DNA of 64,000 bases from Octopus sinensis (GCF_006345805.1 NC_043001.1:39742001-39806000), one strand, 5' to 3'. Shown: positions 791-51,457, counted from the stretch's first letter. Numbers and translations: made by a program. The notes: a model not told the origin generated them from the letters alone.

Positions 791-1023
791 TTTGTTGTAT
801 TCTTATTGTATGATAATTGTTTTTAATTTCTAAATGAATCACATAATTATAAACAACTGTATTAAGTACTTGGGTGGGTTTGTTGGACTAAACACTTCAA
901 GGTGGTGCCTTAGCATGACTGCATTTCAATGACTGAAAGGACTAAAAGACAAAAGTCATATGTTAAGCTGCTTATACAACTCTAATGAATGTAATTTTAT
1001 TAATGGATTGCTTATATACTTAC

Positions 1024-1065
1024 CACCAGGTTTCTGTGAAATGTTGACATAAACACCTTCCCGAT
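1024..1065 (-). CDS. 42-nt tail repeat exon (DREGVYVNISQKPG)
   Basis: ttttcttaaag|AT CGG GAA GGT GTT TAT GTC AAC ATT TCA CAG AAA CCT GGT G|gtaagt; flanks 983-1200 are homologous to 2441-2700. Confidence 0.72.
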
Positions 1066-1305
1066 CTTTAAGAAAATGAATTATAAACATGGCGATAAAT
1101 AACATTTAAATTATATTAGTATTGTGCTGATACTAGCATAATAAACACAAATGAGATACACCCAAACACACTCACACACATATACATGCATGTACACACA
1201 TATCAACAGACCAAAGTTAGAGTGTGTAAGAGTGTTATATTTCATGGTTGTTCATTGATAATTTCTAAGATCATGCTGTGCACTAAAAATATTAATTGTA
1301 CTTAC

Positions 1306-1365
1306 CAAGTGATTGCATCTCTAAATATACAGGTCCTCTAGTTTTAGCATATTGCTTTTCCATAG
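1306..1365 (-). CDS. 60-nt tail exon (xMEKQYAKTRGPVYLEMQSL)
   Basis: atttcttgaag|...CTT G|gtaagt, phase 1-1, open frame, YxxM motif. Confidence 0.7.
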
Positions 1366-2481
1366 CTTCAAGAAATTAATTAAAAATGGGCATATTTATT
1401 ATTTGAAGAGGATGCTTTAAATATTTTGATGTGGCACAGAAAGTAACTAAAAAAATACTAAAATATATTATATATTTTATATAGATATACACATGCATTT
1501 AGAAACAAATAAATATTTGACTTCCAATGAAACTGAGTGTACAATATAAGTTCTTTATCCCTCATTGGTATGTTGCAGAAAAGAAACAAATTGCCAAATA
1601 AATTCATTCTGTATGAACAAAAGGAAACAAAGAGCAATTTTGGTAAATGACTTTTCAGAACTAGTGCTTGGACAGAAAGTTCTCCAATGAATTGGCCCTC
1701 AAAATTTTATTCCATGATCAAAATGCTAATTTTGTAAGAGAAATTATATAAAACTAGTACTTATAGGTTGGTTCACAGAATAAAATTTACTCCTATACAT
1801 TTTCAATGTTATGAAAATCTCAGAATGCTATGAGATTAAATTAATTAATTTATTATGAAATTCTGCTATTTCTGTAATTCAAAAGTTTTGTTGATATTTA
1901 AAATTAAGTATATTACCATTAAAAGCCATTCCCAAATATGGCTGGAGAACTAAGATATTTTTCTTAATTATTTTCAAGCTAGAAGTATCTAAAAATGGGA
2001 CTGATTGCAGTTATCAACAACAACAACTGATTATGTGACATATTCCCCATTGCAAATCTCTTCCATACTTTATGTGTATTGCTTGAGTAAATATCTAGTG
2101 AATTTAACTTGAATTAGATCTTTGTTTGGTTTATGTGTACAACTAAGGCTTACAAAAATATATATATGGCCTGGATTATTAAGGATTAATAGAGGTGTAA
2201 ATTATGTATAGAATTTTTAACATTTTCTATGTTGTATTAAAGAACATCCATACACATGCTATTAAACCATATATTTTGCACAAAGAAAGAATTTTTTGCT
2301 AACTTCACTTGGACTGATTCCAGAGACAGGGCTTGGAAATGAGTCCAAAACAAACAAGTATTAACTCTAAACGTGGCTCCCAAGTATGGCCATAACCTCT
2401 GATTGAAATTTAAATAAAATAAAAGGATGAACTTGTGTTTTAATGAATGTAATTTTATTAAAGGGTTGTTTATATACTTAC

Positions 2482-2523
2482 TATCAGGTTTCTTGAAAAC
2501 ATTAACACCAGCATTATCCACAT
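2482..2523 (-). CDS. 42-nt tail repeat exon (xVDNAGVNVFKKPD; no Tyr)
   Basis: atttcttaaag|AT GTG GAT AAT GCT GGT GTT AAT GTT TTC AAG AAA CCT GAT A|gtaagt. Confidence 0.7.
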
Positions 2524-2628
2524 CTTTAAGAAATTAAAGTAATGAATATGATACACGGCTTTAAATAATATTTAGAATATATTGTGTTGTGCTGAGACTA
2601 GCATAATAAATACAAGATAGATGCGTGT

Positions 2629-2671
<43 letters not shown>

Positions 2672-3559
2672 AACACATATGCATGCATGCATGTGCACTC
2701 ACACACATACACACCATTATCAGTATAAACATGAGTATCAGGTATTAGTTTTAATTTCTGACTCTTAGATAAGAAATGTTCTTATTCTCTCATGAGAGAC
2801 TTTAATAGACAAGATATTTATTGCCCAATCAATGTTACTTAAACAGAATTACACAGTGGCACCCACACTGGTGGGGTCACCAATTGACTTTGCAAGACAA
2901 AGAGTCTTTGAGTGAGGAGGAGGCGTTGGAGGAGATGAACTTGTGTCAGATGATGAAAGATTAGAATGTGACAGAGAGGTAGAAACAGATGTATTGTTGT
3001 TGAGGAGGACCATGGAGAGAGGGAGAGAAAGAGAGCAAGAGTTAACAAGAATGAGGGCAGAAACAGGTTTGTTGCTGTAGAGGAAATACATGATTACTCA
3101 GCCAGAGGAGAGAGCAAAAGAAAGAGTAGGAGACAGCAAGGGCAGAAGAGGGATGGTGGCAAGTACCAGGGTATACTTGCAATGAACAGGGATCAAGGCA
3201 TGGATGAGATGGTAGAGTAAGAAAGGGGGAGATGAATTGTGACAAGTGCTGGCAGGGTATCACCAAGGAGTCATAAGTCGGGAGTGGAGGAATGCAGTAA
3301 CTGGAGAGAATCTGGGTATATATAGACAGAGATAGGAGATGGGGAGAAGCAGCTATGCAGTGAGCAGGGTAGTGTGGACTGGGTTGGGGAGTGGAGGTGG
3401 GGAATACTGTGACTGGTTAGAATCTGATTGGGGGGAAGGGGAGGGGTACACAACAATACAGTTGGTTTGGTCATGTGATGTGTATGGATGTAGACAATTG
3501 TATACAGAAGAGCTGATTGCTTTAAGTAAACAAAACAGTAAATCCAGGAAAGACATGGG

Positions 3560-3920
3560 ATGAAGTATTGAAGGTAAATCTCAAAACAATGTACCTTACC
3601 AAGGAGATGACAAAGGACTGAGACACCTAGTGATTTTCTGTATTTAAAAAGATGTGTCCACCACAGCAAAATTGATACTGGTGCTAATGCTACATTAAAA
3701 AACCGCTGGCAATGGTGCCATGTAAAAAGCACTGGTGCTGGTGCCATTTAAAAGCACCCATTAAACTCCATGAAGTGGTTGGCATTAGGAAGAGTATACA
3801 GCTGTAGAAATCATGACAGAACAGACAATGAAGCCTGATATAGCTCCTAACCTTGCCAACAACTATCAAACCATCCAACCCATGCCAGCATGGAAAACAG
3901 ATGATGATGATGATGATGAT
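3560..3920 (+). mobile_element. 3' end of RTE LINE with (GAT)n tail
   Basis: SRKTWDEVLK-like C-terminus followed by the recurrent tail ccaacccatgccagcatggaaaac-(gat)n; the same tail occurs at ~24250-24420, 31925-31985, 47810-47985 (+) and ~41270-41500, 52490-52800 (-). Confidence 0.6.
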
Positions 3921-4015
3921 CTCACACACACACTTGAAAGGACAAACGAAAATCAGTATCAGTCATAGTGCAAAGTATCCATTTCAACAGCTATTTCAAT
4001 AATTCTTATGTAACA

Positions 4016-4823
4016 CTAGCAGCATAGCCCGGCGTTGCCCGGGTATGTAAGAGCCCCTAGTAGGCAATGGCTAATCCCAATCTAGTCCTTTCCCTCTTGG
4101 GAACGAAGGCGCATGTGTAGGTTGCAATGTCTTCTCTTCACTCGAATACTTCTGTGTATACGATGTTCCTAGCTGTCCCTTTGGGCGAAAACATGAAAAC
4201 ATCATTGCGCCTCTCAAGAGAGTTTGTGGTTTGTGTTTAATACACAAATCGGTTTGCTATGTGTGCCACATATGATTTAATTAACCGATTTTTTCCAGTA
4301 ATAAAGTATCCTATTGGAATAAAAAGAGCCATATAGCTCCTTGGAGCAGACATGATGCTCGCTGTGAATTTAAAAAAAAATTCCTGCCAATTTGTGAAAG
4401 ATATTGTCGAAAATATGTCATCTTGAATTTAAACGCGATTTCCCAATATGGCATGATATTATCGATTTTTTCTGATGGTAAGGTATTGCATGGAAAACTA
4501 ACGTCAGAATTAAGTTTCTTAGGGTAACATTAAGCTTCACCATGAGTTTGGTGAAAATCGATTACAAGTTGCGAAAACTACAACAGAAAATGTGTTGCAT
4601 ATAAAAAGCTTAGATTCTTGACCCCATGTCGAATTTATCGATTCTTTTCAGAACTGGGGGAACTTTTCAAAATTTTCGCTGCGTTAGTTTTGAATTATGA
4701 CATTGGGCTATGTGTGTGTCAAGTTTCATCAGAATCGGTTGAAAGCCGTGGTCAGGGTGAGGGTACAACCTGACAGACACACAGACACACAGACAGACAA
4801 ACTGCCGTTTATATAGAGAGAGA
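4016..4823 (-). mobile_element. Non-autonomous Helitron
   Basis: Minus strand starts A|TC and ends with hairpin CCCGG-GCAACG-CCGGG then CTAG|T; GTCT-type microsatellite near the 5' end; retains a helicase C-terminus-like VFMFSPKGTARNIVYTEVFE* near 4130-4230. Confidence 0.8.
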
Positions 4824-5099
4824 TTACAAAAACAAATAAGTTTATACAATTATATAGCACAGAGAAATCACACCATCAAGGATTTTAAGAAATATAATTA
4901 CAAAATTCAAATTGACTTTATATAGGTTGAAGAGTCAAAGGTAAAATAAAAGTAAAGAAAAATGAAGAAAAAGAAGAAACATAAAAGAAGGATGGAAGTG
5001 AGAAGTGAAAAGTAAAGAAATAAAGAGTATGAATATAGATTTTATAATTGGTCATTGGATGATTATAGTCTATAAACCAGCTCAGGCAACTGAGCCTAG

Positions 5100-6600
5100 A
5101 GGACTAAGGTAAACAGAAGGGGGCCAAAAACTGAGCCTTGGTGGACTCCTTTTCAATGCTGAATTCATTACTATACTCATTTCCAACCTTCAACTTACTG
5201 GCAGCATCCCTGTACATGGTTTCTACTGCTTTTACTAACCACTCATTTATCCCTAGCTTCCATATTGACCACCAGATAAGGGAGTGGGTTATTTTGTCAA
5301 AAGCTCTCTCCATGTCAACAAAAAACAGGTACAGAGGTTTATTTTTGATTAAATATTTCACCTGCAGTTGCCTAACCAGGAATATAGCATCAGTCATGCT
5401 TCTACCTATCACAAATCCAATCTGCATCTCATCTACACTAACTCACATCCTAATTAATTGAGCTATGACCCATTTTGCAATTTTCATCACACGGTTCAGC
5501 AATTTGATGCTTCTGTAATTATTTCTGTCCCAGGCATCATTGTTGCTTTTGTAGCAGTTGACCATAATGCTGCTACACCAGTCATTGGGTATGACTCCCG
5601 CATGGACAACCTAATTAACTATACAGATGACAAAGCTATATCCTACTCCACCAGATACTTTAAGCATCTCAGCAGTGATTCCTGATGGACCAGGGATTTT
5701 TCCGTCTTCATATCCTTAATTGCTTTATTTACTAAGTTATTGTCGATTCAGATAGCTGGTCCCTCAGTTGGGTCAGCATCTGGCAGACTCTCCTTCTCCC
5801 ATTCCATTTTCCACAGTTATCAGCCGTTCATAACAGTGTTTCCAAACCTCTTTATTTGCAGAGTTGTTAAATGCAAGTGAACCATCATCCATGCAGACAC
5901 ATTTCTCTTCTACGGCATCATAATTTTTTCTCCCACACTGTCTTGCAATCTGCAACAATGAAGTCTCTGGTCCTCACATCACAGAATATTGGCAAACTTC
6001 TTTTCTGTTTCTCCCCTGGCTAAAAACACCTATCTCCTAGCTTACCTTCTGGCTATCTGATACAGTTCCCTTCTACCACCACACTTCTAGTCCTGTTCCT
6101 TTTCTTTAAGGAGACTTTGCCCCAGCTGCAGATTCAGTCAGTAGCATGTAATGTCCTTCATATTATATGTTGCTGTATCCTCCACTTTTTCATCAAATGC
6201 TTCAAGTAACACGTCTCTAAATCTCTGTCCATTCAGGGGATACTTAAGTTTCTAGACCTTTCTTTTCTACACTGGTTTTCTTCTAGGTAGCCATTTAGCC
6301 CTGATCCTGAAGTTGCTAACAACTAACCTATGTTAGAGGGTGCATCGTTCAACTTGGAAAATATACACAGCCAACTTTCCCATTTTCTGGTGAGAATGTA
6401 GTCAACCCACCAGATTGATAGGGGAACAGGTGACTGGTAGGTTTCGTGAATGATTGCAGATTATTTGCATCACAGAAGTCCAGTAGCTTGATTCCCTCCT
6501 CATTACAGGAACAGAATCTGTTGCCACTATGCATACCATGGAAGCCACCCAGATGTCATCCATTATGCCCATTGAAGTTGCCATCTATGAAGAGACAGTC
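5100..6600 (-). mobile_element. Degraded RTE LINE fragment (APE + RT part)
   Basis: EEGIKLLDFCDANNL (APE) and GRSMTDAIFLVRQLQVKY...FVDMERAFD (RT domains 2-3), with stops and frameshifts. Confidence 0.85.
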
Positions 6601-6634
6601 CCTATCATTCATCAATGAGGTAGTTTATTCTTTT

Positions 6635-6945
6635 CTTCTATTCTTTTATTTGTTTCAGTCGTTTTGACTGCGGCCATGCTGGAGCACTGCTTTTTGGTAA
6701 AAGAAATTGACCCTAGGACTTATTGTTTGTTAGCCTGGTACTTATTCTATCAGCCTCTTTTGCCGAACCACTAAGTTATGTGGACATAAACACACCAACA
6801 TCAGTTGTCAAGTGATATATACATATAAGGCTTTGGTCGGTCCAAAGCTATAACAGAAGACACTTGCCCAAGGTATCACTCAGTGGGACTGAACCCAGAA
6901 ACATGCATTTGGGAAGCAAGCGTTTTACCACACAGCCATACCTCT
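6635..6945 (-). mobile_element. tRNA-derived SINE
   Basis: Reverse complement of the SINE at 40545-41170 (ggctgtgtggtaa...gggttc...ttgggcaagtgtcttc head; ccagcatggccgcagtc...gactgaaac tail). Confidence 0.7.
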
Positions 6946-7657
6946 TACTTTTTGGATGCAACACACATCTACATACCTTCGTTGAAGCATCTCAACAATC
7001 TCACTAGACCTACCTTTCAATGTGCCAACTCTGAGGGTGTGAAAGGTGTGTGCTGAGGAGACATAGGGATGGGGGACAGCATTTTACATCTGAAAAAAAA
7101 CTTGCATGAATATTTCGCAGACATATCGTGTAAATACAAAATAGGTCAACATGTATTTACTTCACCAACATTTTATTCGCTTCACAGTCACCACATTTAC
7201 CAGGAGATAGCTACTAGATAGAAATGGAAGTGTAGGAGAGAGTGCTCTGTATTAGTATCCAATAGTGGTATTAAGAGAAAGACTTCTGGTAGAGGTTCAG
7301 AGAGAAAGACTTCTGGTACAGGTGGTGGAGGTGGGTTGGGCAGGTGCACAGCCAACAACCATCCATCATTGACTGCCCAATTCCCTTGATAAAGACCATG
7401 TTAAATATCCTAACAGACATAGCTAAAACCAATGTTTAACATATACCATGGAAAAAGCAGAGATTCAGATGTAATACGAGCAAGATAGAGTAAGGTGAGT
7501 AACAAACAAATGAAGAGATGAAATTTTGAGAATTAGAGCTACAGAAGAAACAGATTTGAACATTTGGATTTCTTAACTTTACTATAACATACAGCATGAG
7601 AACAGACGTAGCTTTATGTAATATAATGCTATTTGCTTCAAGGCATAAATTATACTT

Positions 7658-7694
7658 GGTTCAGATGAAATTTTAATACAAGAACCTTCCATAT
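7658..7694 (-). pseudogene. Dead 42-nt repeat exon (donor deleted)
   Basis: Acceptor ttctttcttaaag| is intact; AT ATG GAA GGT TCT TGT ATT AAA ATT TCA TCT GAA CC runs directly into AAGTAT; restoring 7 nt (TGATAGT, as in the 2482 copy) rebuilds a 42-nt exon plus GTAAGT. Confidence 0.55.
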
Positions 7695-8266
7695 CTTTAA
7701 GAAAGAAAAGAAAAAAATGAATAAATTTATTGTTTGTGTGGGTGTAGTGCATATCGGAAATAAACAGTTTATAGAATCAGAAAGATGGGAAAATATTTAT
7801 GATATGACATTATGATCTCAGTATCTCATTCCTTTGTCATTGTCTGAAAGGTTCAGCATCCTGAAGCTGTCCTTCAGTACCTTGTCCCAAGTCTTCCTCA
7901 GTCTCCCTCTCCCATGAGTTCCATACACTTTGAGCGATTGATACTTCTTTATGGAGCTGTTGAACCACCCAGCCATGCCAGCTTGGGAAACAAATAAAAT
8001 AATGATAATAATGATGTTATATATGTTGTGTGTATGTGTATGTGTCTGCTTGCATGCATGTGTGTGTGTGTGCATAAAATACATATTATATATTATATGT
8101 ATAAATTAGGTGTGGCAAAATTCTGCTCTTCAGCCACACAGTTTTGGATTCAATCCCACTGTGTGACACCTCCAGCATATGCCTTCTATTATATCCCCGT
8201 GTCAATCAAAGACTTGCATGTGGATTTGGCTGACAAAATTTGAAAGAAGCCTGTCATATATTTCTG

Positions 8267-8302
<36 letters not shown>

Positions 8303-8606
8303 TGAATGCATGCACATGTGTTTGTGTGTGTGTATGTATGCATGTCTGTCTTTGTGATTATACTCTCAGCACTTGACAACCAGTGCTGATTAGTTTACCT
8401 CCCCTGAGTAACTGAGTTGTTTAGTAAAAAGATTGATAGAAAAAGCAGCAGAAGGGTTCATTTATTCAACTAAAACTCTTCAAGATGGTACACCACAATG
8501 GATGCAGAGAAGTGACTGAAACAAGTGAAAGGTGAAAGGCAAAATATCATTTTGCGAGTAGCATGAACTATAATTCTTTTTACTTATAGGCATTAATTAT
8601 ACTTAC

Positions 8607-8648
8607 TATCAAATACAAGTGAAATAGTAGCATAAGCATTTTCCTCAT
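8607..8648 (-). CDS. 42-nt tail repeat exon (xEENAYATISLVFD)
   Basis: tttattttcatag|AT GAG GAA AAT GCT TAT GCT ACT ATT TCA CTT GTA TTT GAT A|gtaagt. Confidence 0.7.
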
Positions 8649-9127
8649 CTATGAAAATAAAAATGTAAAAATAAATTTGTTTATTGTCTATATATGTGTG
8701 GTAAATGACATCTGAAATAAACTGTTTCTGGGATCAGATGTATTAAAGAACGTTTATAGCATTATAATAAAATATCAGGTTATACTAAAGTATACTGAAA
8801 AAAAAATAAAACAAAAACAAAATAACATATAAAGAAACACTTACAAAATTTAATTACCAATGTAAGTGTGATAAATCAAGAAAAAGATCACTTTGTCTTT
8901 GACTTTTTATATTCAATATTAACTATGGAAAGATCATCAGTCCTATTGTTGTTGTTATTGTTTACGCCTAAGTCAGACATATGATCGCATGCATTTTCTC
9001 CTTAGCATTGAGACATTGAAATAAGATCTGGTCCTCTAATCTATTGAATCCTGTTGAACAACCCTACTCATGCCAACTTGGGAAACAGAAAAAATAAGGT
9101 TCATGATAATGCAACGTGTGTGTGTGT

Positions 9128-9203
<76 letters not shown>

Positions 9204-9460
9204 GTGTGTACAAATCTGTCTGTGTTTATCTTCCCAACATTTGACCAGTGCTGATTAGTTTAGCACCCCAGAGTAACTGAGTTGTTTAATAAAAAAAATT
9301 GATAGAAAAAGCAGTAGTTAATTTATTCAACTAAAACCCTTAAAGATGGTACACCACTATGGATGTAGAGAAGTGACTGAAACAAGTGAAAGGCAAAATA
9401 TCATTTTGATAGTAACATGAACTATAATGCTATTTACTTATAGGCATTAATTATACTTAC

Positions 9461-9502
9461 TATCAGATGCATGTGAAATAGTAGCACAAGTATTTTCTTG
9501 CT
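9461..9502 (-). CDS. 42-nt tail repeat exon (xQENTCATISHASD; Tyr replaced by Cys)
   Basis: tttattttcatag|AG CAA GAA AAT ACT TGT GCT ACT ATT TCA CAT GCA TCT GAT A|gtaagt. Confidence 0.65.
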
Positions 9503-9962
9503 CTATGAAAATAAAAATGTAAAATAAATATGTTTATTGTCTATATATGTGTGGTATATGACATCTGAAATGAACTGTTTCTAGGATCAGATGTATTAAA
9601 GAACGTTTATAGCATTATAACAAAATATCAGGATATACTAAAGTATACTGAAATAAAATAAAACAAAAACAAAATAACATATAAAGAAACACTTACAAAA
9701 TTCAATTACCAATGTAAGTGTGATAAATCAAGAAAAAGATCACTTTCTCTTTGACTTTTTATATTCAATATTAACTATGGGAAGATGATCGGTCCTATTG
9801 TTGTTGTTACTGTTTACACCCAAGTCAGACATATGATCGCATGCATTTTCTCCTTAGCATTGAGACACTGAAATAAGATCTGGTCCTCCAATTCATTGAA
9901 TCCTGTTGAACCACCTTACACATGCCAGCTTAGAAAACAGAAAAAATAACGATCATAATGAT

Positions 9963-10013
<51 letters not shown>

Positions 10014-10040
10014 ATGTGTGTGCATAAAATACATATTTTA

Positions 10041-11271
10041 TTGGTTCATCCCATAAATAATGCAGTTTTTTCAATTGCATGGACTAAATCTTAGTGGGGA
10101 ATGGGATAAGCTACCTGCGTCAACTTGCTATAAAAGCAGGTAGTAATTTTACCTTGTCCTTACTCTTAGTGCAAGTTTTGAAGAGTGCACTTCAATTCTA
10201 ACAGTTATTTTTTCAAAGTGACAAAGGAACATATTCGGCATATTTTGCTTTATGAGTTCAATAAAGGCAAAAACGCAGCAACAAGTGCAAGGAATATTAA
10301 TGCAGTATATGAGGATCAGACAATAAGCATAAACCAGTGTCAATGGTGGTTCCAGAAATTCCGAGCCGGAAACTGCACCCTTGCAGATGAGCTTTGTCCT
10401 GAAAGATCTGTAAAGCTCAACAAGGATGTTCTGCAAACTCTGGTGGAACAAAATTCCACCGTAACTGTTGAGGAATTAGCAGAGAGACTTGGATTTGGTC
10501 ATTCAACTATTCATTGACAGCTGTGTGCCATTGGAAAAGAGAACAATTTGGGTTAATGGGTTTCTCACAAACTTTCCAAATTTAATTGCATGCAAAGAGT
10601 GAATGTGTGATCTTCTTTGCTGTCATATCTCACAAATGAACCTTTATGGACCGAATTGTGACTGGTGATGAGAAATGGATTCTCTATAAAAATGTCAAGC
10701 ACCAAGGACAGTGAGTAGGGAAATAAGAAACAATGGCACCCCCAGACTAAAGGTCTTCCCCCACATAAGGTGTTGTTATCTGTTTGGAGGGATATGAAAG
10801 GTTTAGTCCACTTTGAACTTTTAAATCCAAAGCAAACAATAACAAAAATCTACTGCAGCTTGATTGTAGAAAAACCACCATCTTTGGTTTCAAGACAAAA
10901 GGTGTTCTTCCATCAGGCCACATACAGCAAGAATAAGATTCCAAAAGCTGGGGCAGTTAAAATGGGAAACCCCCCCCCCCCCCATCATATTCGCTGGACA
11001 TTGCACCATCTCATTATCATTTATTCCGTGGTCTTCAAAATCATTTGGATGGAAAAAATATAAATTCCGTAGATGAAGTCAAAACAGTACTGGGGGATTT
11101 TCTTTGTCACAGACAAGTGAATTTTGGAAGAGGGGCCTTTACCAGATAGATGGAAGAGCATTGTAGAAAATAAAGGAGAGTATATTTTAGATGAAAAAAA
11201 CTTTGTTTCTCTTGATTTTGAAAAATAATAGAAGCATAAAAAAAAACTGCATTATTTATGGAATGACCCTA
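10041..11271 (+). mobile_element. Degenerate mariner transposon
   Basis: TIRs ttggttcatcccataaataatgcag / ctgcattatttatggaatgacccta, TA flanks; HIRHILLYEFNKG...QWWFQKFRAG N-terminus; later frameshifts and stops. Confidence 0.85.
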
Positions 11272-11446
11272 TATATTATATGTATATATTAAATGTTGTA
11301 AAAAGATTGCTCTTCAGCCATGTGGTTTGGGATTTTGTCCCACTGTGTAACACCTCTGGCATATGCTTCCTATTGTATCCCCATGTCAATCAAATCATGT
11401 GGATTTTGTAGACAAAATTTGAAAGAAGCCTGTCATCTCTTTCTTT

Positions 11447-11516
<70 letters not shown>

Positions 11517-11618
11517 TGTTTGTGTGTGCATATCTGTCTTTGTGTATGCATATCTTCCCAACATTTGACAATCAGTGCTGATTACTTTACCTCCCCTGAG
11601 TAACTGAGTTGTTTAGTA

Positions 11619-12103
11619 CCGTTTATCCTCGAGTATAACCCATACTTTTTTTCCAAAATTTAAAGGTCAAAATCCCTAGTGCGTACTATATACAAAGTCA
11701 AAAATGAAAATTATTTTCTAAGCAATGTCCAAGTCCCTATTTGCTGTCCGGCAATGTTTATTCAGACGCATTTTGTGATGTCGGTCGTGAAAATACCTTA
11801 AATCATCCATAACTTTCAGTAAGCAACATTTATTAAACGTTATTACTGTTACTTCTTTATTTTCTGCAAACAAAATGCACAAAAAAGCTACACGTTTGCA
11901 TTATGTTATATATAGAAAATAATAATAATAAAGGATGTTACCATACACATTTTTACAAACCAAGGACGTTATATAGCCCTCCTTGACTCAAGTTAGAGAA
12001 GGGGTGCATATTATACACAAGATTTAGGTTTATCAGAGGTACAGCCCACTAAAAATCCCCTGCATATTATACTCAAGGGCGGACTATACTCGAGGATTTA
12101 CGG
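11619..12103. mobile_element. Tc1/mariner-superfamily MITE (485 bp)
   Basis: TIRs CCGTTTATCCTCGAGTATA / TATACTCGAGGATTTACGG and TA TSD; removing it rejoins the host repeat unit (gtttagta|aaaaa). Confidence 0.85.
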
Positions 12104-12286
12104 TAAAAAAAATTGATAGAAAAAGCAGCAGGAGGGTTCAGTTATTCAACTAAAACTCTTCAAGATTGTACACCACTATGGATGCAGAGAAGTGACTGAA
12201 ACAAGTGAAAGGTGAAAGGCAAAATATCATTTTGAGAGTAACATGAACTATAGTTCTTTTTACTTATAGGCATTAATTATACTTAC

Positions 12287-12328
12287 TATCAAATACAAGT
12301 GACAAAGTAGCATAAGCATTTTCCTCAT
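12287..12328 (-). CDS. 42-nt tail repeat exon (DEENAYATLSLVFD)
   Basis: tttattttcatag|AT GAG GAA AAT GCT TAT GCT ACT TTG TCA CTT GTA TTT GAT A|gtaagt. Confidence 0.7.
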
Positions 12329-12617
12329 CTATGAAAATAAAAATGTAAAAATAAATTTGTTTATTGTCTATATATGTGTGGTAAATGACATCTGAAATAA
12401 ACTGTTTCTAGGATCAGATGTATTAGATAACGTTTATAGCATTATGATAAAATATCAGGATATACTAAAGTATACTGAAATAAAACAAAACAAAAACAAA
12501 ATAACATATAAAGAAACACTTACAAAATTCAATTACCAATGTAAGTGTGATAAATCAAGAAAAAGATCACTTTCTCTTTGACGTTTTAAACTTAATATTA
12601 ACTATGGATAGATGATA

Positions 12618-13225: not shown

Positions 13226-13904
13226 AAAAATCAATATATATTCATTTTCCTGAAAGCTATGAGGGAAAAATTGGATCTTTTGAATTTTCCAAAAGTGCCC
13301 CCCACCCATGTTCGTTTGCGCAAATTTTTTTCATATTTGTTTTCTGCACAGTTGTTAACACCCAGCAGGCTGGATTTTTTTGTTGTTTTTTTTTTTTGTT
13401 TTCAGGTTAGGATCTTTATATTGACCCAACCCTTACCTCACAAAGTGGAAATAAGAAAGATAAACAACTCTTGTTTTCCAACCTGACACACATCTAATCC
13501 TCATTTTATAGCTTTAATTATAATTACTATTATTATTCATTAATTTATCTACCTACCTACACAGTATCATTTATTCCATGCCGTATGTCATAGAAAACTT
13601 AAGAAGTCCTATGTTCAATTCTCTCTCACTTTAACACTCGTTATAATTATTATTGTTATTCATTTATTTATCTATTTAGACACCAAGTTTTGCTTACTTC
13701 AGCTATAGTTATAGTTAAATTAAGAAAGCAAATGTGAAATTCTGTTTCACTCTATAGTGCTCATTATTATGGTTATTCATTTAGCTATCTATTTAGAGGC
13801 ATGTTATAGCAAAGTTAAGAAATCCAATTGTTCAATTCAGTTTATTCTTGCTCTCAATCTTAAAAATTTCATCTCTTCATTTGTTTTGTTTTGTTACCCG
13901 CTAT

Positions 13905-14034
13905 CTTAAGCAAATGTTCCATTGTTTTTTAATAATGATAGAAGGCAAGGTTTACAACATTGGAAGAATCTTAACCAAATGTTCCATTGTTTTTTAATAA
14001 TGATAGAAGGCAAGGTTTACAACATTGGAAGAAT
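13905..14034. repeat. 65-bp tandem duplication
   Basis: cttaa(g/c)caaatgttccattg...ttggaagaat x2, one mismatch. Confidence 0.9.
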
Positions 14035-18324: not shown

Positions 18325-18341
18325 CTTCTGTTGACGAAGTG
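18325..18341 (-). CDS. 17-nt micro-exon (phase 2-1)
   Basis: ttttatgaatttaatag|CACTTCGTCAACAGAAG|gtaagt; restores phase 1 after the 19-nt exon. Confidence 0.65.
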
Positions 18342-19473: not shown

Positions 19474-19492
19474 TCTTTATTGTTTTTGACAC
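19474..19492 (-). CDS. 19-nt micro-exon (phase 1-2), juxtamembrane tail
   Basis: cttttttcttttatcag|GTGTCAAAAACAATAAAGA|gtaagt; phases fit the TM exon upstream and the 17-nt exon downstream. Confidence 0.7.
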
Positions 19493-19891
19493 CTGATAAA
19501 AGAAAAAAGTAATGTGTATAGAAATGTTATTCAATATCAAACATTTCTTGTAAGAGTAGTAATAGTGTGGTGTTGGTGAGAGAGTATGACGGATAGGGGA
19601 GAGCGGAAGTAGGGCTCGCAGGGCGGAAGCAGGGCTTGCAGGGCGCATGCGCGGGAGGAAGTGGAAGCGACAGGCAGAACGCACGTGTGGGATCGAGCAG
19701 TTGCGGCAGACACGACGAAGGCACCAGACGCATCGAGTTGGCTAAGAGGTATCCGAATTCATCTCCGACAAGGTAAGACCCAATTACATTTCCATTCTCC
19801 CTTTTTCTGTTGTACTCTTTTCATCGTCCACACCACAAGCTATTTCAGCAAATAAACACTCGGTTTTATAAAAAATAAAAATAAAAAAATT

Positions 19892-20650
19892 ATGCAGAGT
19901 GCTTGGGTTTCGCGCGAACCTATAACACTGTTTTGCGGCGACACTGATGTGGTCGCTTGGTTGAAGAGAGTGAAGTTGGTGGCGAAGCTCTATTGTATAG
20001 GTGACCTGGTGAGCTTCATGCCGCTGTACTTGGATGGCCCGGCGTTGGCGTTATATTTAGAGATGGAGGAGACGGACCAACTTAGCGCAGATAAAGTAGA
20101 AATCCGACTGATGGAGGCCTTTGCGGAAGGTATGTTCGAGGCATACGCTCGCCTGGGTAGAATGAGATGGACTGGGCAACAGATGGACGTGTTTGCCAAT
20201 GAGCTTAGAAGACTGGCTAAATTGGCGGGTTATGAGGGAGAGTCGCTAGAACGGACGGTTAGGTTGGCGTTCGTGACTGGCTTTCCCAACATCATGTCGG
20301 TCGAGCTACAGAAGCTCCCGAACGTGCGTTCAATGCCGATGGCCGACATCATATCTCGGGCATGTGTACTAGTTTCATGCAGCAGGATGACGTCGGTAGC
20401 AGCGACTGCAATGTCGAAAAGTGGCCCAGCTAGGAGCAGCGGAGAGGGGCTGAGGAAAGAACGTGTGCGACCGTTCAAAGGACAGTGTTTCCGGTGCCAA
20501 GGTCCACACATGGTGCGTGACTGTGGGTCGCCCAAGACTGAAGTGATTTGCTACCGGTGTCAAGAGCCGGGGCATGTAGCCAGCGAGTGTCTGCGGGGAA
20601 ATGGACTGCGGGAGACTACTGCGCCGGTAGTTGTCCCTTTGGATCAGTAG
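19892..20650 (+). CDS. gag: Gypsy Gag with two zinc knuckles
   Basis: CFRCQGPHMVRDC and CYRCQEPGHVASEC; 252-aa open frame. Confidence 0.9.
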   Translation: MQSAWVSREPITLFCGDTDVVAWLKRVKLVAKLYCIGDLVSFMPLYLDGPALALYLEMEETDQLSADKVEIRLMEAFAEGMFEAYARLGRMRWTGQQMDVFANELRRLAKLAGYEGESLERTVRLAFVTGFPNIMSVELQKLPNVRSMPMADIISRACVLVSCSRMTSVAATAMSKSGPARSSGEGLRKERVRPFKGQCFRCQGPHMVRDCGSPKTEVICYRCQEPGHVASECLRGNGLRETTAPVVVPLDQ

Positions 20651-23508
20651 CGGCGCGTTTATCATCGCTACCTGTGGTCGACATTCTGGTGAAGGGGAAG
20701 ATGTCGCGAGCCCTGGTGGACACGGGCTGTACAACGACCCTGATGACTACAGAAGTGGCAGAGACGTGGAGTGGAGGAAGCAGTGTTAGGGAAGTCGACG
20801 GAAGAGAAGTACACTGCGAAGGGGTTACGGATGCGCAGATTGTGGTGCAGGGACTACAGCTGACGTTGCGAGTGATTGTGGTTGGTCACTTGGTGGACGA
20901 GATTGATGTGGTGATGGGGATGGATGCAACCACCCGCTTGGGAGGTGTCACCGTCAACGAGGCTGGCGTAACGTTTGGGTTAGCGGGGAAACCGTGTAGG
21001 GCGAGACCGTGCACCGGTGACAACTGTGAGGAAAAGGATGCGGCGCACACCATTGAAGACCAGGATTTTCGGGCTGTCTTTGATGGCAAGAGGTGGACAG
21101 TGGAGTGGCTCTGGAAGGGAGAGCCCCCGATGTTAAAGAATAAAGTGGGCTGCTATCAGCATACTCTAAAAGGAGATGCCAGAAGTGAGTTCGAGGGGGA
21201 GGTGGAGCGGTGGATTAAGGAGGGCATACTGATCCCTTGGGAAAAAGAAGAGAGCGGAGTCCTGCCACTGATGGCGGTGATACAGCCCACAAAGCATAAG
21301 GTCAGGCCAGTGCTTGACTTCCGAGAGCTGAATGACCACATGTCGTGTCATACAGGCAGCGAGGCCACGGATGTCTGCGGAGACACCTTGCGAGAGTGGA
21401 GGCAGACGACGGGGGCCTCCACGATTGTTGATTTGAAGTCGACATACCTACAGGCGCATGTGGCTGAGAAATTATGGAAGTACCAGCTCGTCAGGTATAG
21501 GGGCCGGACGTACTGTCTGACCAGGTTGGGATTCGGGCTGAATTCAGCGCCAAAGATTATGGCAACAATTCTCAAGGCCATCCTGGGGAAGGTGGACAGA
21601 GTAAAAAGGGCCACCAATTCATACATCGATGACATTCTGGTGGATGAAACCGTGATACCAGCAACGGAGGTCATAGGCCACCTGAAGAGTTTTGGACTGA
21701 TCGCCAAGCCGCCAGAGGCTATGGAGGGAGGTGCTGCACTGGGCCTCAAGCTATGGAGAGACAAGGCCGGCGCCTTGGTGTTCCGGCGAGGGAATGAGAT
21801 CCCTGAACTGGGCGCCAGCATGAGTAGACGGGAACTGTTCTCTGTGTGTGGGAAGCTGGTGGGACACTACCCGATTGCAGGTTGGCTCCGGACAGCATGT
21901 AGCTTCATCAAGAGACGAGCCGAAGGAGTGAAGTGGAATGATAAAGTGGGGGAGAGGACGATCGACATGATGCAGGAAGTCTTGGTCAGAGTAGGAGCAG
22001 AGGACCCAGTGAGGGGCAGCTGGTATGCTCCCAGATCAAAGAGCGGGATTGTATGGTGTGACGCCAGTAGCATCGCAATATGGGTTGTCTTGGAAGTGGG
22101 AGGTGTCACGGTGGAAGATGCAGCCTGGCTCAGGAAGATGGATGACTGCAATCATATCAACGTGGCGGAGTTGGATGCCGTGCTGAAGGGGGTGAACCTA
22201 GCCTTGAAGTGGGGGTTGCACACCATAGAAATCAGGACTGATTCGGCCACTGTACTTGGTTGGGCGACAGCAGTCATCACCGATGAGCGGAGGGTGCGGA
22301 CCAAAGGGGCTGCAGAGATGCTGGTAAAACGTCGATTAGGAATGCTGCGTGAACTAACCACTGAGTTCAATCTGAAGCTGAACGTGATCTTTGTGCCTTC
22401 CAAGAAGAACAGGTCAGACGTCCTGACTAGGGTAAAGCGAGCCTGGTTGCAGGTGTCAGAGGATGCGAAGCAGGCTGTAGCTGCAGTATGCTGTCTGAGC
22501 AACTCGGAGTTACGGAGACTGCACACCATGCATCACATGGGTGTGGACAGGACATTGTTCCTAGCCAGAAAAGTTGACTCCGACGTAACAAGACAGAGCG
22601 TGCAGAGAGTGGTTAGTAGTTGTGACAGGTGCCAGTCCATCGACCCTGCTCCGGTCGTGCATGAAACGGGAAGTATTCCAGTGGACCAGGACTGGAAACG
22701 ACTGGCGGTGGACATAACACACTACCAGCAGGGGACATACCTCTCAATGGTTGACTGCAGACCGGGGCGGTTGGCCATATGGAGGGAGATGAAGTCGGGG
22801 ACCGCAGAAGAAATTGTGAAAGTGTTGAATGAGATATTCCTGGAACGAGGCCCCGTGGATGAACTGCTTCTGGACAACGGCACTGCATTTTGCTCGGATG
22901 TGCTGAGAGAAATGCTTGATGAGTGGAAGGTCAACTGCTTCTTCAGGGCGGCATACCAGCCAAGTGGAAACGGGGTGGTGGAAAGGCATCATCGTACCAT
23001 CAAGGCCATGGCAGAGAGGGGTCACATTTCACCAGTTGAGGCCGTGTTTTGGTACAATATGTCGCCCAGATCAGGACAGGCTGAGGAGTCAGTGCCACAC
23101 AGGGCAATATTCAGGTACGAGTGGAGGCATCCGTGTACTACATCAATGCGACCCGGGGCAGAGGAAGAGCACGCCTTCGTGCAGGTCGGGGAGGAAGTCT
23201 GGGTAAAACCCCCAAACGCACAGTGTACATCGCAATGGGGAAAGGGGACAATAACCGATGTAAATTCAAAAAATAACATCTTGGTCGATGGTATGCCATG
23301 CCACGTTTTGGACATACGGAGGATTGTCCATGCCCCAGAGGATGGGACCAGCAGCAGTGGGCAAGACGAAAACAACAGACAGGATGACGAGGCCGGCAGC
23401 AACACACCAGGAACAAGTCCTAGAGTCGCACTGCGACCACAGAGGGAGCGGCACCCTCCTCCCTGGTTAGCTGATTATAAAACCAGTTTCAGGTGCGGGA
23501 GCGAGTGA
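20548..23508 (+). CDS. pol: Gypsy Pol (PR-RT-RNase H-IN), probably expressed by -1 frameshift
   Basis: LVDTGC, YIDD, CDAS/AEL/RTDS, HH-CC zinc finger and D-D-E core (AVDI, LDNG, VERH); uninterrupted; in the -1 frame relative to gag. Confidence 0.93.
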   Translation: MLPVSRAGACSQRVSAGKWTAGDYCAGSCPFGSVAARLSSLPVVDILVKGKMSRALVDTGCTTTLMTTEVAETWSGGSSVREVDGREVHCEGVTDAQIVVQGLQLTLRVIVVGHLVDEIDVVMGMDATTRLGGVTVNEAGVTFGLAGKPCRARPCTGDNCEEKDAAHTIEDQDFRAVFDGKRWTVEWLWKGEPPMLKNKVGCYQHTLKGDARSEFEGEVERWIKEGILIPWEKEESGVLPLMAVIQPTKHKVRPVLDFRELNDHMSCHTGSEATDVCGDTLREWRQTTGASTIVDLKSTYLQAHVAEKLWKYQLVRYRGRTYCLTRLGFGLNSAPKIMATILKAILGKVDRVKRATNSYIDDILVDETVIPATEVIGHLKSFGLIAKPPEAMEGGAALGLKLWRDKAGALVFRRGNEIPELGASMSRRELFSVCGKLVGHYPIAGWLRTACSFIKRRAEGVKWNDKVGERTIDMMQEVLVRVGAEDPVRGSWYAPRSKSGIVWCDASSIAIWVVLEVGGVTVEDAAWLRKMDDCNHINVAELDAVLKGVNLALKWGLHTIEIRTDSATVLGWATAVITDERRVRTKGAAEMLVKRRLGMLRELTTEFNLKLNVIFVPSKKNRSDVLTRVKRAWLQVSEDAKQAVAAVCCLSNSELRRLHTMHHMGVDRTLFLARKVDSDVTRQSVQRVVSSCDRCQSIDPAPVVHETGSIPVDQDWKRLAVDITHYQQGTYLSMVDCRPGRLAIWREMKSGTAEEIVKVLNEIFLERGPVDELLLDNGTAFCSDVLREMLDEWKVNCFFRAAYQPSGNGVVERHHRTIKAMAERGHISPVEAVFWYNMSPRSGQAEESVPHRAIFRYEWRHPCTTSMRPGAEEEHAFVQVGEEVWVKPPNAQCTSQWGKGTITDVNSKNNILVDGMPCHVLDIRRIVHAPEDGTSSSGQDENNRQDDEAGSNTPGTSPRVALRPQRERHPPPWLADYKTSFRCGSE
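20596..20637 (+). promoter_or_regulatory. -1 programmed ribosomal frameshift signal
   Basis: G GGA AAU heptamer in gag phase (20596-20602), 7-nt spacer, stem-loop GGGAGACUACUG-CGC-CGGUAGUUGUCCC (20610-20637). Confidence 0.75.
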
Positions 23509-42177: not shown

Positions 42178-42192
42178 TAATCCATTACATGG

Positions 42193-45733: not shown

Positions 45734-45832
45734 CTCTTATTATGTGGAATTTATAAGCAAGAAACCCCAAAGTTATTAATAATAATACACTTCCTACAGT
45801 ACAACCAATAACTGCATCCAAAGAGACATTTT
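45734..45832 (-). CDS. Transmembrane exon (99 nt, phase 1-1)
   Basis: Acceptor atatcgtttcag|, donor AGAG|GTTGGT; translates ENVSLDAVIGCTVGSVLLLITLGFLAYKFHIIR (21-residue hydrophobic run followed by basic residues). Confidence 0.8.
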
Positions 45833-48962: not shown

Positions 48963-49271
48963 CCTTATATCTCAAAGTAAAAACAGCAGTTTTTTTTCCT
49001 ATGGAGTTTTCCACTGTTAAGGTATAAGTACCAATATCATCATCTTTGATGTCTTCTCTCTTTAAACTAGTACAGCTTCCTTTGAAAGGAAACTCATCTT
49101 GTAAATAATCAGTTATTAAATATTTGTTTGAGTCAATTAATTCCTCATTTTTCTGCCATTTTACATCAGATTTTGGATGTGAATAAAAACACTGTTTGAA
49201 AATTACAGTTTCTTTCTTTGAAACATTTCTAATTTTTGAACCATTTGATAATGAACTGAAAGTAGGTTTCA
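48963..49271 (-). CDS. Ig-like (I-set-like) domain exon (309 nt, phase 1-1)
   Basis: Acceptor ttttttccaccag|, donor AAGG|GTAAGT; VKPTF...QCFYSHPKSDVKW...DDDIGTYTLTVENSIGKKTAVFTLRYK; matches ORF track 48922..49272; the F-strand Cys is replaced by Leu. Confidence 0.9.
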
Positions 49272-51205: not shown

Positions 51206-51457
51206 CTTGAATTTTGTAGTTTGATGATTTACTCACGTTAAAATATTCATTGCTTACATGACACTTCCATGTACCAGTATCATTTAAAGTAGGATTGTTT
51301 ATAGGTAATACTCTCATATCATAAGTATTCTTAGTGACATTTCCCCATTTTTGCTCCAGTTTGTATGTATGATTGTCTGGGTTTCCATCAAATGCAGAGC
51401 AATTAATTGTTATATTATTTGTCTTATTTGAAATATGTAAGTTTACTTGAGGAGGAT
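51206..51457 (-). CDS. Ig-like domain exon (252 nt, phase 1-1)
   Basis: Acceptor ttatttcttttaag|; translates xPPQVNLHISNKTNNITINCSAFDGNPDNHTYKLEQKWGNVTKNTYDMRVLPINNPTLNDTGTWKCHVSNEYFNVSKSSNYKIQ, with a B-strand Cys, a DGNP turn and a DTGTWKC F-strand; donor CAAG|GCAAGT. Confidence 0.9.

What the first reader, a model, noticed from the sequence alone, without database searches (positions are those of the whole stretch)
1024..12328. Six homologous 42-nt symmetric exons: motif gain and loss by tandem exon duplication
Seen: exons at 12328, 9502, 8648, 2523 and 1065, plus a dead one at 7694, share length, phase 1-1 and a loose pattern x-x-E/D-(N/G)-x-Y-x-x-I-S-x-x-x-D. Two intact copies have lost the Tyr (TGT Cys; GGT Gly), and the Tyr-bearing copies diverged into YAT(I/L) versus YVNI. 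Flanking introns record duplications of different ages (recent 8-12 kb triplet; older 983-1200/2441-2700 pair). Inference: any subset can be skipped in frame, so splicing or copy-number variation could tune the number and type of phosphosites.
Basis: partly seen in the sequence, partly recalled or inferred. Interest (0 to 1): 0.75.

Follow-up and report, generated by a model that had tools for sequence, protein, structure and literature searches.

The report
Duplicated tyrosine-motif mini-exons, octopus receptor
The six 42-base exons are real: they form the start of a long array of tandemly duplicated mini-exons encoding the tyrosine-rich intracellular tail of an octopus-specific immunoglobulin-type membrane receptor, an already annotated but undescribed gene that shows signalling motifs being gained and lost by exon duplication.

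Summary
On the minus strand lie five intact 42-nt, phase 1-1, AG/GTAAGTATA exons (12328, 9502, 8648, 2523, 1065) and one dead copy (7694), whose donor was removed by a 7-nt deletion.

- a 60-nt two-tyrosine exon (1365-1306);
- two micro-exons (19 and 17 nt);
- the upstream TM and Ig exons.

Spliced together, these exons reproduce residues 397-531 of an annotated Octopus vulgaris protein exactly (CAI9722592.1, 709 aa). That protein's tail continues beyond the window with at least 9 more such exons.

Homologous tails were found only in clustered Octopus paralogues, one with about 27 mini-exons.

Duplication history is supported by several results:
- an ~853-bp unit repeated three times;
- an older B-type pair;
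- separate A/A' and B clades.

Exon 9502 (Tyr to Cys) carries 8 substitutions against 1.3 expected from its flanks, so it is not a neutral relic.

Splicing control is untested in this gene. In a sister-species paralogue, however, RefSeq isoforms X2 and X3 differ by exactly one 42-nt YVN exon.

The motifs are YxxL/I, YxN (Grb2-type) and YxxM. None is a canonical ITIM or ITAM.

Verdict: a real, ordinary-in-kind but undescribed case. Moderate interest.

The parts
12287..12328 (-). Mini-exon A1, 42 nt, phase 1-1, EENAYATLSLVFD (YATL)
   Evidence: AG/GTAAGTATA, open in phase 1. Present in gene model P0015.
9461..9502 (-). Mini-exon A2, 42 nt, QENTCATISHASD. Tyr replaced by Cys (TGT).
   Evidence: It has 8 lineage-specific substitutions against 1.29 expected from 456 nt of flank (Poisson 6e-5), and 7 of the 8 change the protein. 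Included in P0015.
8607..8648 (-). Mini-exon A3, 42 nt, EENAYATISLVFD (YATI)
   Evidence: 40/42 identical to A1. Included in P0015.
7653..7694 (-). Dead mini-exon A' (MEGSCIKISSEPS): Tyr to Cys, and donor lost through a 7-nt deletion
   Evidence: Its flanks align to the A units at 67-70% over 176 nt. It is the counterpart of the O. bimaculoides exon VERAYGISSKPS, which lies 853 nt (start to start) after that locus's A exon. Absent from P0015.
2482..2523 (-). Mini-exon B0, 42 nt, VDNAGVNVFKKPD. Tyr replaced by Gly (GGT).
   Evidence: Flank homology to the 1065 unit. Included in P0015. By synteny it corresponds to the paralogue's MKISYVNVSRKPD exon; this orthology is tentative.
1306..1365 (-). 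60-nt phase 1-1 exon, MEKQYAKTRGPVYLEMQSL (YAKT and YLEM).
   Evidence: tblastn to paralogue tails. AG/GTAAGT. Included in P0015.
1024..1065 (-). Mini-exon B, 42 nt, REGVYVNISQKPG (YVNI, a YxN motif)
18325..18341 (-). 17-nt micro-exon ((D)TSSTE), phase 2 to 1
   Evidence: Regex hit with AG/GTAAGT. Needed to reproduce P0015.
19474..19492 (-). 19-nt micro-exon (GVKNNK), phase 1 to 2
45734..45832 (-). Transmembrane exon, 99 nt, phase 1-1 (ENVSLDAVIGCTVGSVLLLITLGFLAYKFHIIR)
48963..49271 (-). Ig (I-set) domain exon, 309 nt, phase 1-1
51206..51457 (-). Ig domain exon, 252 nt, phase 1-1, with a GC donor (GCAAGT)
   Evidence: The same GC donor is present in the paralogous loci.
8271..10022 (.). Two adjacent copies of the ~853-bp A duplication unit (A3 and A2), bounded by (TG)n tracts
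   Evidence: 8271-9172 against 9137-10022, 88% including the microsatellite and ~95% outside it.
12104..12616 (.). Third copy of the A unit (A1)
   Evidence: 95% to the A3 unit and 91% to the A2 unit over ~512 bp.
10182..11060 (+). Decayed mariner (Mos1-type) element between A1 and A2. It accounts for part of the 2.8-kb spacing there, against 0.85 kb elsewhere.
   Evidence: ORFs. HTH_48 domain hit, E=1.6e-22.
983..1200 (.). B-unit flank, older duplicate of 2441-2700
   Evidence: 78% over 101 nt and 74% over 82 nt. Alignment.
2441..2700 (.). B0-unit flank, older duplicate of 983-1200

Best explanation
The region is the membrane-proximal part of the cytoplasmic-tail exon array of a multi-Ig, single-pass receptor gene. 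It matches O. vulgaris CAI9722592.1, which carries the lift-over name LOC115212114. The gene lies on the minus strand and spans more than 50 kb of transposon-filled introns in the window.

The tail is built from 42-nt and 60-nt phase 1-1 mini-exons. Each encodes one or two short tyrosine motifs preceded by acidic residues: YATL/I, YVNI, and YAKT...YLEM.

Shown:
- The exons exist, are in frame with the TM and Ig exons, and are used in a public gene model.
- They arose by repeated local tandem duplication of exon-plus-intron units, with (TG)n tracts at the unit edges.
- Copies have since lost the tyrosine (9502, 2523), lost a splice site (7694), or changed rapidly (9502).
- Paralogues differ widely in copy number.

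Inferred:
- The tyrosines are phosphorylated after receptor engagement and dock SH2 proteins. By the motif rules, YxN would bind Grb2/Drk-type adaptors, YxxM would bind PI3K p85-type proteins, and YxxL/I would bind Src/Syk/SHP-type proteins.
- Exon number and type therefore set the docking capacity of the tail. This is fixed partly in the genome and partly by in-frame cassette skipping.
For: - Exon anatomy and frame.
- Conceptual splicing reproduces P0015 residues 397-531 exactly. P0015 is CAI9722592.1 from O. vulgaris GCA_951406725.2.
- Pfam I-set, Ig_3 and Ig_2 domains on the ectodomain exons.
- The pattern is strand-specific and non-random.
- Duplication units and their ages. Exon-plus-flank tree with A/A' and B clades at bootstrap 100.
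- A2 exon: 8 substitutions against 1.29 expected (P=6e-5), while A1 has 2 and A3 has 0.
- Paralogous loci carry the same exon types in different numbers, including dead copies.
- Family tails have up to ~27 alternating 60/42 units, and members come only from Octopus species.
- Annotated cassette use of a 42-nt YVN exon: isoforms X2 and X3 differ by exactly 14 residues.
- YxN as the Grb2 motif, YVNV as the Gads/Grb2 motif and YxxM as the p85 motif are stated in PMC3342071.
Against: - No transcript data for this gene could be examined. The O. vulgaris annotation merges Iso-Seq, RNA-seq, protein and ab initio evidence (PMC10700109), so P0015 may be partly ab initio. It also truncates the Ig4 exon at an internal GT.
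- P0015 includes all five intact copies, which suggests constitutive use rather than skipping.
- A search of 5.8 billion proteins with the spliced tail found nothing.
- None of the motifs is a canonical ITIM, ITSM or ITAM.
- Phosphorylation and SH2 binding are untested.
- In comparisons between paralogous modules, synonymous sites in the exons are as diverged as non-synonymous ones. Outside A2 there is therefore no clean signal of positive selection.
Confidence: 0.72

Rival explanations
1. Constitutive repetitive tail. All intact mini-exons are always included. Motif dosage is set only by genomic duplication and loss, and alternative splicing plays no role in this gene.
For: The only public model of this gene includes every intact exon in order. 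All five keep strong, near-identical splice signals. No competing RNA structure was detected around the units (z about 0).
Against: In a close paralogue, a 42-nt YVN exon is annotated as present or absent between isoforms X2 and X3. It is also included or omitted between O. vulgaris models. The intron inside the 60+42 module is better conserved between paralogues (80-82%) than the exons (62-70%), and it contains an invariant UG-rich block. This pattern is typical of regulated cassette exons.
Confidence: 0.35
2. The Tyr-less copies (9502, 2523) are decaying pseudo-exons. Gene predictors thread them in only because they are in frame. The functional set would then be just the Tyr-bearing exons.
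For: Both lost the one residue that defines the motif. A genuinely dead copy (7694) sits in the same array.
Against: Both keep a perfect AG...GTAAGTATA and an open frame, unlike 7694. Neutral decay cannot exceed the flank rate, yet 9502 has about six times the substitutions of its flanks, and they are confined to the exon. Tyr-less units are also retained in frame in paralogues, for example five EREQD(A/S)EDSEPRYL units in P0013.
Confidence: 0.2
3. The excess divergence of exon 9502 is not due to selection. It would be a single multi-nucleotide event, such as a conversion patch from an unseen diverged paralogue or error-prone repair. Alternatively it could be an old sequence left behind when gene conversion homogenised the flanks.
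For: A1 and A3 are 95% identical over 512 bp, but only 73% identical in the adjoining block. That adjoining block may, however, be independent SINE insertions rather than part of the ancestral unit. The exon's 19-24% divergence resembles this older level.
Against: The diverged patch coincides with the exon (positions 2-37), and both flanks are at background level. No donor with a QENTCATISHASD-like exon was found in any retrieved paralogue. If the flanks were homogenised while the exon escaped, that still implies selection to keep the exon distinct.
Confidence: 0.25
4. The 'exons' are chance open frames, or pieces of a repeat or transposon, and not coding sequence.
For: Between-class exon identity (22-27/42) is at chance level when the 42 nt are taken alone. 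The region is rich in SINEs and microsatellites.
Against: The pattern is strand-specific. Splicing the exons matches an annotated protein exactly. The same exon types occur in spliced RefSeq proteins of three Octopus species. The frame is continuous with the TM and Ig exons.
Confidence: 0.02

Closest known systems
PECAM-1 (CD31) cytoplasmic tail
   Same: A multi-Ig type I receptor whose tail is encoded by many short exons that are alternatively spliced. Skipping one exon (exon 14) removes a tyrosine docking site and changes signalling (PMC5664058).
   Different: No sequence relationship was found; PECAM was not among the PDB hits. PECAM's tyrosines are canonical ITIMs, and these are not. PECAM's tail exons are not a recently duplicated homologous array, and here the array reaches about 16-27 units.
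Transmembrane adaptor scaffolds LAT, NTAL (LAT2) and LAX
   Same: Tails carrying multiple YxN (Grb2) motifs, including YVNV, and a YxxM p85 motif in LAX (PMC3342071). The window has YVNI and YLEM, and paralogues have many YVNV motifs.
   Different: Those adaptors have almost no ectodomain and (LAT, NTAL) a juxtamembrane CxxC palmitoylation site. This protein has several Ig domains and no CxxC after the TM segment. The motif resemblance is short and probably convergent.
Tandem exon duplication arrays (for example mutually exclusive exon clusters such as Dscam)
   Same: Same-length, same-phase homologous exons side by side with homologous flanking introns. This is a recognised route to isoform diversity (PMC9013439, PMC9741552).
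   Different: Classical cases are mutually exclusive substitutions of a folded segment. Here the models string the copies in series. The units are short linear motifs in a probably disordered tail, and no competing RNA structure was detected.
Botryllus fester co-receptors (FcoR)
   Same: An invertebrate, lineage-restricted, clustered receptor family whose tails carry variable tyrosine motifs (ITIM, hemITAM, other SH2 motifs). These are swapped between alleles and by alternative splicing (PMC11507803).
   Different: The ectodomain architecture is different and no homology was found. A role in allorecognition or immunity is not shown for the octopus family.

Membership tests
Tandemly duplicated symmetric exon array | Adjacent exons of equal length and phase in one gene and on one strand | tested here: met
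   Five intact 42-nt phase 1-1 exons and one dead copy on the minus strand.
Tandemly duplicated symmetric exon array | Homology extends into the flanking introns, so a unit was duplicated rather than an exon converging | tested here: met
   About 470 nt of flank at ~5% divergence in the triplet. 7694 against the A units, E=1e-14. 2523 against 1065 flanks, ~84%. Tree.
Tandemly duplicated symmetric exon array | Copies are used in mRNA | tested here: inconclusive
   The public model CAI9722592.1 contains all five, but its transcript support is unknown. No transcript-derived protein was found.
Mutually exclusive exon cluster | Only one copy is included per transcript, often through competing RNA structures | tested here: not met
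   Gene models include the copies in series. Folding of the units gives z of 0.34 and 0.01.
Immunoglobulin-superfamily type I membrane receptor | Ig domains followed by one TM helix and a cytoplasmic tail | tested here: met
   I-set E=4.5e-12 and Ig_3 E=1.4e-10. The hydrophobic stretch AVIGCTVGSVLLLITLGFLAY is followed by basic residues. The signal peptide lies outside the window and was not tested.
ITIM/ITSM inhibitory receptors | (I/V/L/S)xYxx(I/V/L) or TxYxx(V/I) | tested here: not met
   Position -2 is N (ENAYATL/I), G (EGVYVNI), K (EKQYAKT) or P (GPVYLEM).
ITAM / hemITAM | YxxL/I-x6-8-YxxL/I, or an acidic triad followed by G then YxxL | tested here: not met
   In the 60-nt exon the tyrosines are 8 residues apart and the first is YAKT. 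A-type exons read D-E-E-N-A-Y-A-T-L, so the acidic triad is one residue further from the Tyr than in DEDGYxxL. The motif is hemITAM-like only.
Multi-YxN Grb2-docking tails (LAT/NTAL/LAX-like in function) | Several YxN motifs in the cytoplasmic tail | tested here: met
   YVNI in the window. Two YANV further along the same protein, and many YVNV/YVNI/YVNA motifs in paralogues. Binding was not tested.
Multi-YxN Grb2-docking tails (LAT/NTAL/LAX-like in function) | Short ectodomain and juxtamembrane CxxC palmitoylation site | tested here: not met
   The protein has a multi-Ig ectodomain, and the sequence after the TM segment is KFHIIRGVKNNK, with no Cys.
PECAM-1-like alternatively spliced tail | Tail exons skipped in frame in different isoforms | tested here: inconclusive
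   Not observable for this gene. In the paralogue LOC115229375, isoforms X2 and X3 differ by one 42-nt exon.

The most novel reading that the evidence does not exclude
The array may be an evolvable phosphotyrosine 'barcode' in a clustered, Octopus-restricted, fast-evolving Ig receptor family. That would make it a cephalopod counterpart of vertebrate LRC/FCRL-type or Botryllus FcoR-type recognition receptors.

In this reading, exon duplication, tyrosine loss and cassette skipping together set signalling strength and type. Tyr-less copies such as 9502 would be selected spacers. Without 9502, A1 and A3 would read YATL-x10-YATI, an ITAM-like pair. With it, the two tyrosines are 28 residues apart.
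Probability: 0.2. Interest if true: 0.75.

Novelty: new member of a known kind. Interest (0 to 1): 0.45.

Why it matters
Tandem exon duplication and alternatively spliced tyrosine-motif tails are both well known. What is new here is a clear, datable example in a cephalopod. A lineage-restricted, clustered Ig receptor family builds its signalling tail from interchangeable 42- and 60-nt units, and copy number ranges from a few to about 27.

The array shows several stages side by side:
- birth of new copies (the triplet);
- rapid change (9502);
- loss of the tyrosine (9502, 2523);
- death of an exon (7694).

If expression data confirm cassette use, the locus would be a tractable system for studying how short linear signalling motifs evolve by exon duplication. 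It would also be a candidate recognition-receptor family in animals whose immune and neuronal recognition receptors are poorly known.

Tried and rejected
- **Word-indexed protein searches.** Searches of the 5.8-billion-protein database with the window's Ig-plus-tail sequence and with the spliced tail did not return the window's own gene. It was found only by the exhaustive representative search.
- **Further copies in the window.** I looked for more mini-exon copies with a splice-site scan and an nhmmer profile and found none.
- **RNA structure.** I tested whether the units fold into unusual RNA structure, as docking or selector sites or as editing substrates would. They do not (z 0.34 and 0.01).
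- **Orthology of L001/L002.** I first read these loci as orthologues from another species. I rejected this once P0015 showed that the window's gene is itself in the O. vulgaris assembly, so they are paralogues.
- **'Exons faster than introns' as positive selection.** I considered this reading for the paralogue comparisons and weakened it, because synonymous sites are equally diverged and other alignable introns are 66-77% identical. The safer reading is that the intron inside the module is conserved while the exons are close to neutral outside the motif residues. Only exon 9502 keeps a clean excess.
- **Spurious hits.** Twelve of the 25 hits in the representative search are microbial FSGSYxDLTNKP-repeat proteins and are spurious.
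- **Structure search.** A PDB sequence search gave only generic Ig hits such as Robo, Dscam and IgLONs.
- **Motif membership.** ITIM, ITSM and ITAM membership fails on the motif rules.
- **B-type orthology.** The tree does not resolve B-type orthology (bootstraps 9-33). The 2523 to M1-42 correspondence rests on synteny alone.
- **Literature.** I found no paper on this family.

Full report
**Where the window comes from**

The window is octopod DNA. Its two large minus-strand open frames are Ig-domain exons that hit only uncharacterised Octopus proteins. The rest is mostly transposons and microsatellites.

**The observation**

- Five have an AG acceptor behind a pyrimidine tract, the identical donor GTAAGTATA, and no stop in phase 1.
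- Their peptides are EENAYATLSLVFD (12328), QENTCATISHASD (9502), EENAYATISLVFD (8648), VDNAGVNVFKKPD (2523) and REGVYVNISQKPG (1065).
- 7694 (MEGSCIKISSEPS) has TA where the donor GT should be.
- The Cys (TGT) and Gly (GGT) replacements are as described.

The loose motif hits 5 of 93 AG-42-GT open candidates on the gene strand and none of 106 on the other strand. A profile built from such exons finds exactly these six in the window.

Taken alone, the 42 nt of different classes match at only 22-27/42, which is what the best random 42-mers in the window reach. Common ancestry therefore has to be argued from the flanks, and the flanks support it:
- The three copies at 8-12 kb share about 470 nt of flank at ~5% divergence.
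- The 7694 unit aligns to those units over 176 nt (E about 1e-14).
- 2523 and 1065 share flanks at about 84%.
- All classes share the cttaaag/catag acceptor context and the gtaagtata donor.

**The gene**

- The Ig exons (51457-51206 and 49271-48963) and a TM exon (45832-45734) are all phase 1-1.
- A 60-nt phase 1-1 exon at 1365-1306 (MEKQYAKTRGPVYLEMQSL) lies between 2523 and 1065.
- An exhaustive HMMER search with a paralogue's tail returned P0015, which is CAI9722592.1 of the O. vulgaris assembly GCA_951406725.2 (709 aa, gene range 144 kb).
- P0015 revealed two further micro-exons, at 19492-19474 and 18341-18325.

Splicing the TM exon, the two micro-exons, the four 42-nt exons 12328, 9502, 8648 and 2523, then the 60-nt exon and 1065, reproduces P0015 residues 397-531 exactly.

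One residue differs in the Ig4 exon, so the window comes from another assembly or haplotype of the same species complex. P0015 also cuts Ig4 short at an internal GT. The full domain needs a GC donor, which is conserved in the paralogues and used by RefSeq models there.

After 1065, P0015 continues with at least nine more 60- and 42-type units and ends in SYQ. The window therefore holds only the first part of the array.

**The family**

Spliced tails of the same build occur in RefSeq and ENA proteins of O. sinensis, O. vulgaris and O. bimaculoides. Accession numbers and contig sizes indicate that the genes are clustered on one chromosome.
- XP_036359227.1 has about 27 alternating 60/42 units, including five near-identical modules.
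- No genuine hit came from outside Octopus. The remaining hits are microbial repeat proteins.
- Paralogous loci L001/L002 (O. vulgaris) and L003 (O. bimaculoides) carry the same exon classes in other numbers.
- These include dead copies. In L001/L002 the 60-nt exons of modules 2 and 3 read TG at the acceptor. Module 3 in L001 also lacks the donor GT.
- In L003 the A exon is followed 853 nt later (start to start) by a 39-nt exon, VERAYGISSKPS. That spacing matches the period of the window's triplet (853-854 nt), and this exon is the counterpart of 7694 (ISSEPS against ISSKPS).
- 7694 lost its donor through a 7-nt deletion.

**History**

An NJ tree of exon plus or minus 80 nt gives an A/A' clade and a B clade, both with bootstrap 100. 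The window's three A copies are monophyletic and sit next to the A' units.

Flank substitutions are split 12, 14 and 10 among A1, A2 and A3, so the three are about equally old.

The A1-A2 spacing is larger than the others in part because a decayed mariner element lies between them. A1 also carries a 488-bp insertion. Beyond it, similarity to A3 drops to 73%, which could mean an older duplication later homogenised near the exon.

B-type relationships are not resolved by the tree. Synteny suggests that 2523 corresponds to the paralogue's MKISYVNVSRKPD exon, which keeps its tyrosine: the segment 2184-1463 matches the sequence that follows module 1 and module 2 in L001.

**Selection**

A2 (9502) fails that test clearly. 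It has 8 lineage-specific substitutions in 42 nt against 1.29 expected from 456 nt of its own flanks (Poisson 6e-5). All fall between exon positions 2 and 37, and 7 change the protein. A1 has 2 and A3 has 0. Neutral decay cannot produce this. Either the exon changed under selection, or it was protected from homogenisation, or a conversion or mutation patch hit it. No donor for such a patch was seen.

For the older modules, exons are 30-38% diverged against 17-20% for the intron inside the module. However, synonymous sites are as diverged as non-synonymous ones, and other alignable introns between the paralogues are 66-77% identical. I read this as near-neutral exons apart from the conserved Y-V-N and K-P codons, plus an unusually conserved internal intron with an invariant UG-rich block. 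I do not read it as positive selection.

**Splicing**

No transcript data for this gene were within reach, and its one public model includes all five intact copies. Indirect support for cassette use comes from two sources.
- O. sinensis LOC115229375 isoforms X2 (173 aa) and X3 (159 aa) are identical except for DMKISYVNVSRKPD, which is exactly one 42-nt YVN exon.
- O. vulgaris models of the paralogous locus either include that exon (P0008, P0016) or skip it (P0004).

The two copies of that paralogous locus (L001 and L002) are 98-99.5% identical. They differ by a 4.6-kb segment that carries the NYATI exon. This could be a haplotype difference or an assembly artefact.

**Function**

Function is inferred only.
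- The tail has acidic residues before each tyrosine.
- Its motifs fit known SH2 rules: YxN for Grb2-type adaptors, YVNV as in LAT and LAX, and YxxM for p85 (PMC3342071).
- It has no canonical ITIM, ITSM or ITAM.
- In function it resembles PECAM-1's multi-exon, alternatively spliced tail (PMC5664058) and multi-YxN scaffolds. It is not a sequence relative of either.

**Verdict**

This is a real feature, correctly seen. It is part of a larger, annotated but undescribed Octopus receptor family. The duplication and motif-loss story is well supported. Splice or copy-number tuning is plausible but unproven for this gene.

Noticed in passing
window 19856-23505 (+), with repeated ends near 19530-19820 and 23470-23799: An LTR retrotransposon sits in the intron just upstream of the 19-nt micro-exon. 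It has long open gag (zinc knuckle) and pol frames (protease, RT-like/RNase H, integrase), and the 988-aa pol frame is uninterrupted.
   Followed up: partly
window 35186-36247 (-): A mariner/Mos1-type transposase ORF of 354 aa appears intact (Transposase_1, HTH_48). A decayed relative at 10182-11060 (+) separates exons A1 and A2.
   Followed up: partly
window 51205-51204 (-), donor of the Ig4 exon: The full Ig4 exon ends in a GC-AG intron donor (G|GCAAGT). The same GC donor is present in the paralogous loci. The public model CAI9722592.1 instead uses an internal GT and so truncates the Ig domain, which is probably an annotation error.
   Followed up: partly
L001 44461-44992 vs L002 75535-80117; L001 18185-29969 vs L002 58878-61098: Two O. 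vulgaris copies of the paralogous locus are 98-99.5% identical. They differ by a 4.6-kb segment holding the NYATI mini-exon (only in L002) and by the segment holding the TM exon (only in L001). This is either haplotype structural variation or an assembly artefact.
   Followed up: partly
window 1170-1240 and 2620-2690 (-); alignment A3 columns 239-255: A UG-rich tract about 100-170 nt upstream of every B-type 42-nt exon is invariant across five paralogous units. The intron between the 60- and 42-nt exons is better conserved than the exons themselves. This may be a splicing-regulatory element.
   Followed up: no
L002, model P0016 (CAJ1099246.1): A public O. vulgaris model fuses an adhesion-GPCR-like gene to the mini-exon tail of the paralogous locus. 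It is probably a chimeric annotation, arising where the TM exon segment is missing.
   Followed up: no
window 57994-60762 (-): A second LTR-type element is present (integrase zinc-binding and core domains, aspartyl protease, gag-like frame). It sits where the next upstream Ig exon would be expected, and no such exon was found in the window.
   Followed up: partly
window 13903-14032 (+): A perfect-register tandem duplication of a 65-nt unit (98% identical) lies in the intron upstream of A1.
   Followed up: no
window 42111-44966 and 28896-30269 (+): Two related non-LTR retrotransposon copies (RVT_1) lie in the TM-to-tail intron. Fragments of the same element family are read as protein tails in several public models (P0004, P0008, P0024, P0027).
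   Followed up: partly
Proteins P0019-P0023, P0026, P0028-P0030, P0032-P0035: Microbial proteins with long FSGSYxDLTNKP-type repeats score against the octopus DGTYVNVSKKP units. This is a chance resemblance between repeats and a trap for profile searches with this tail.
   Followed up: yes
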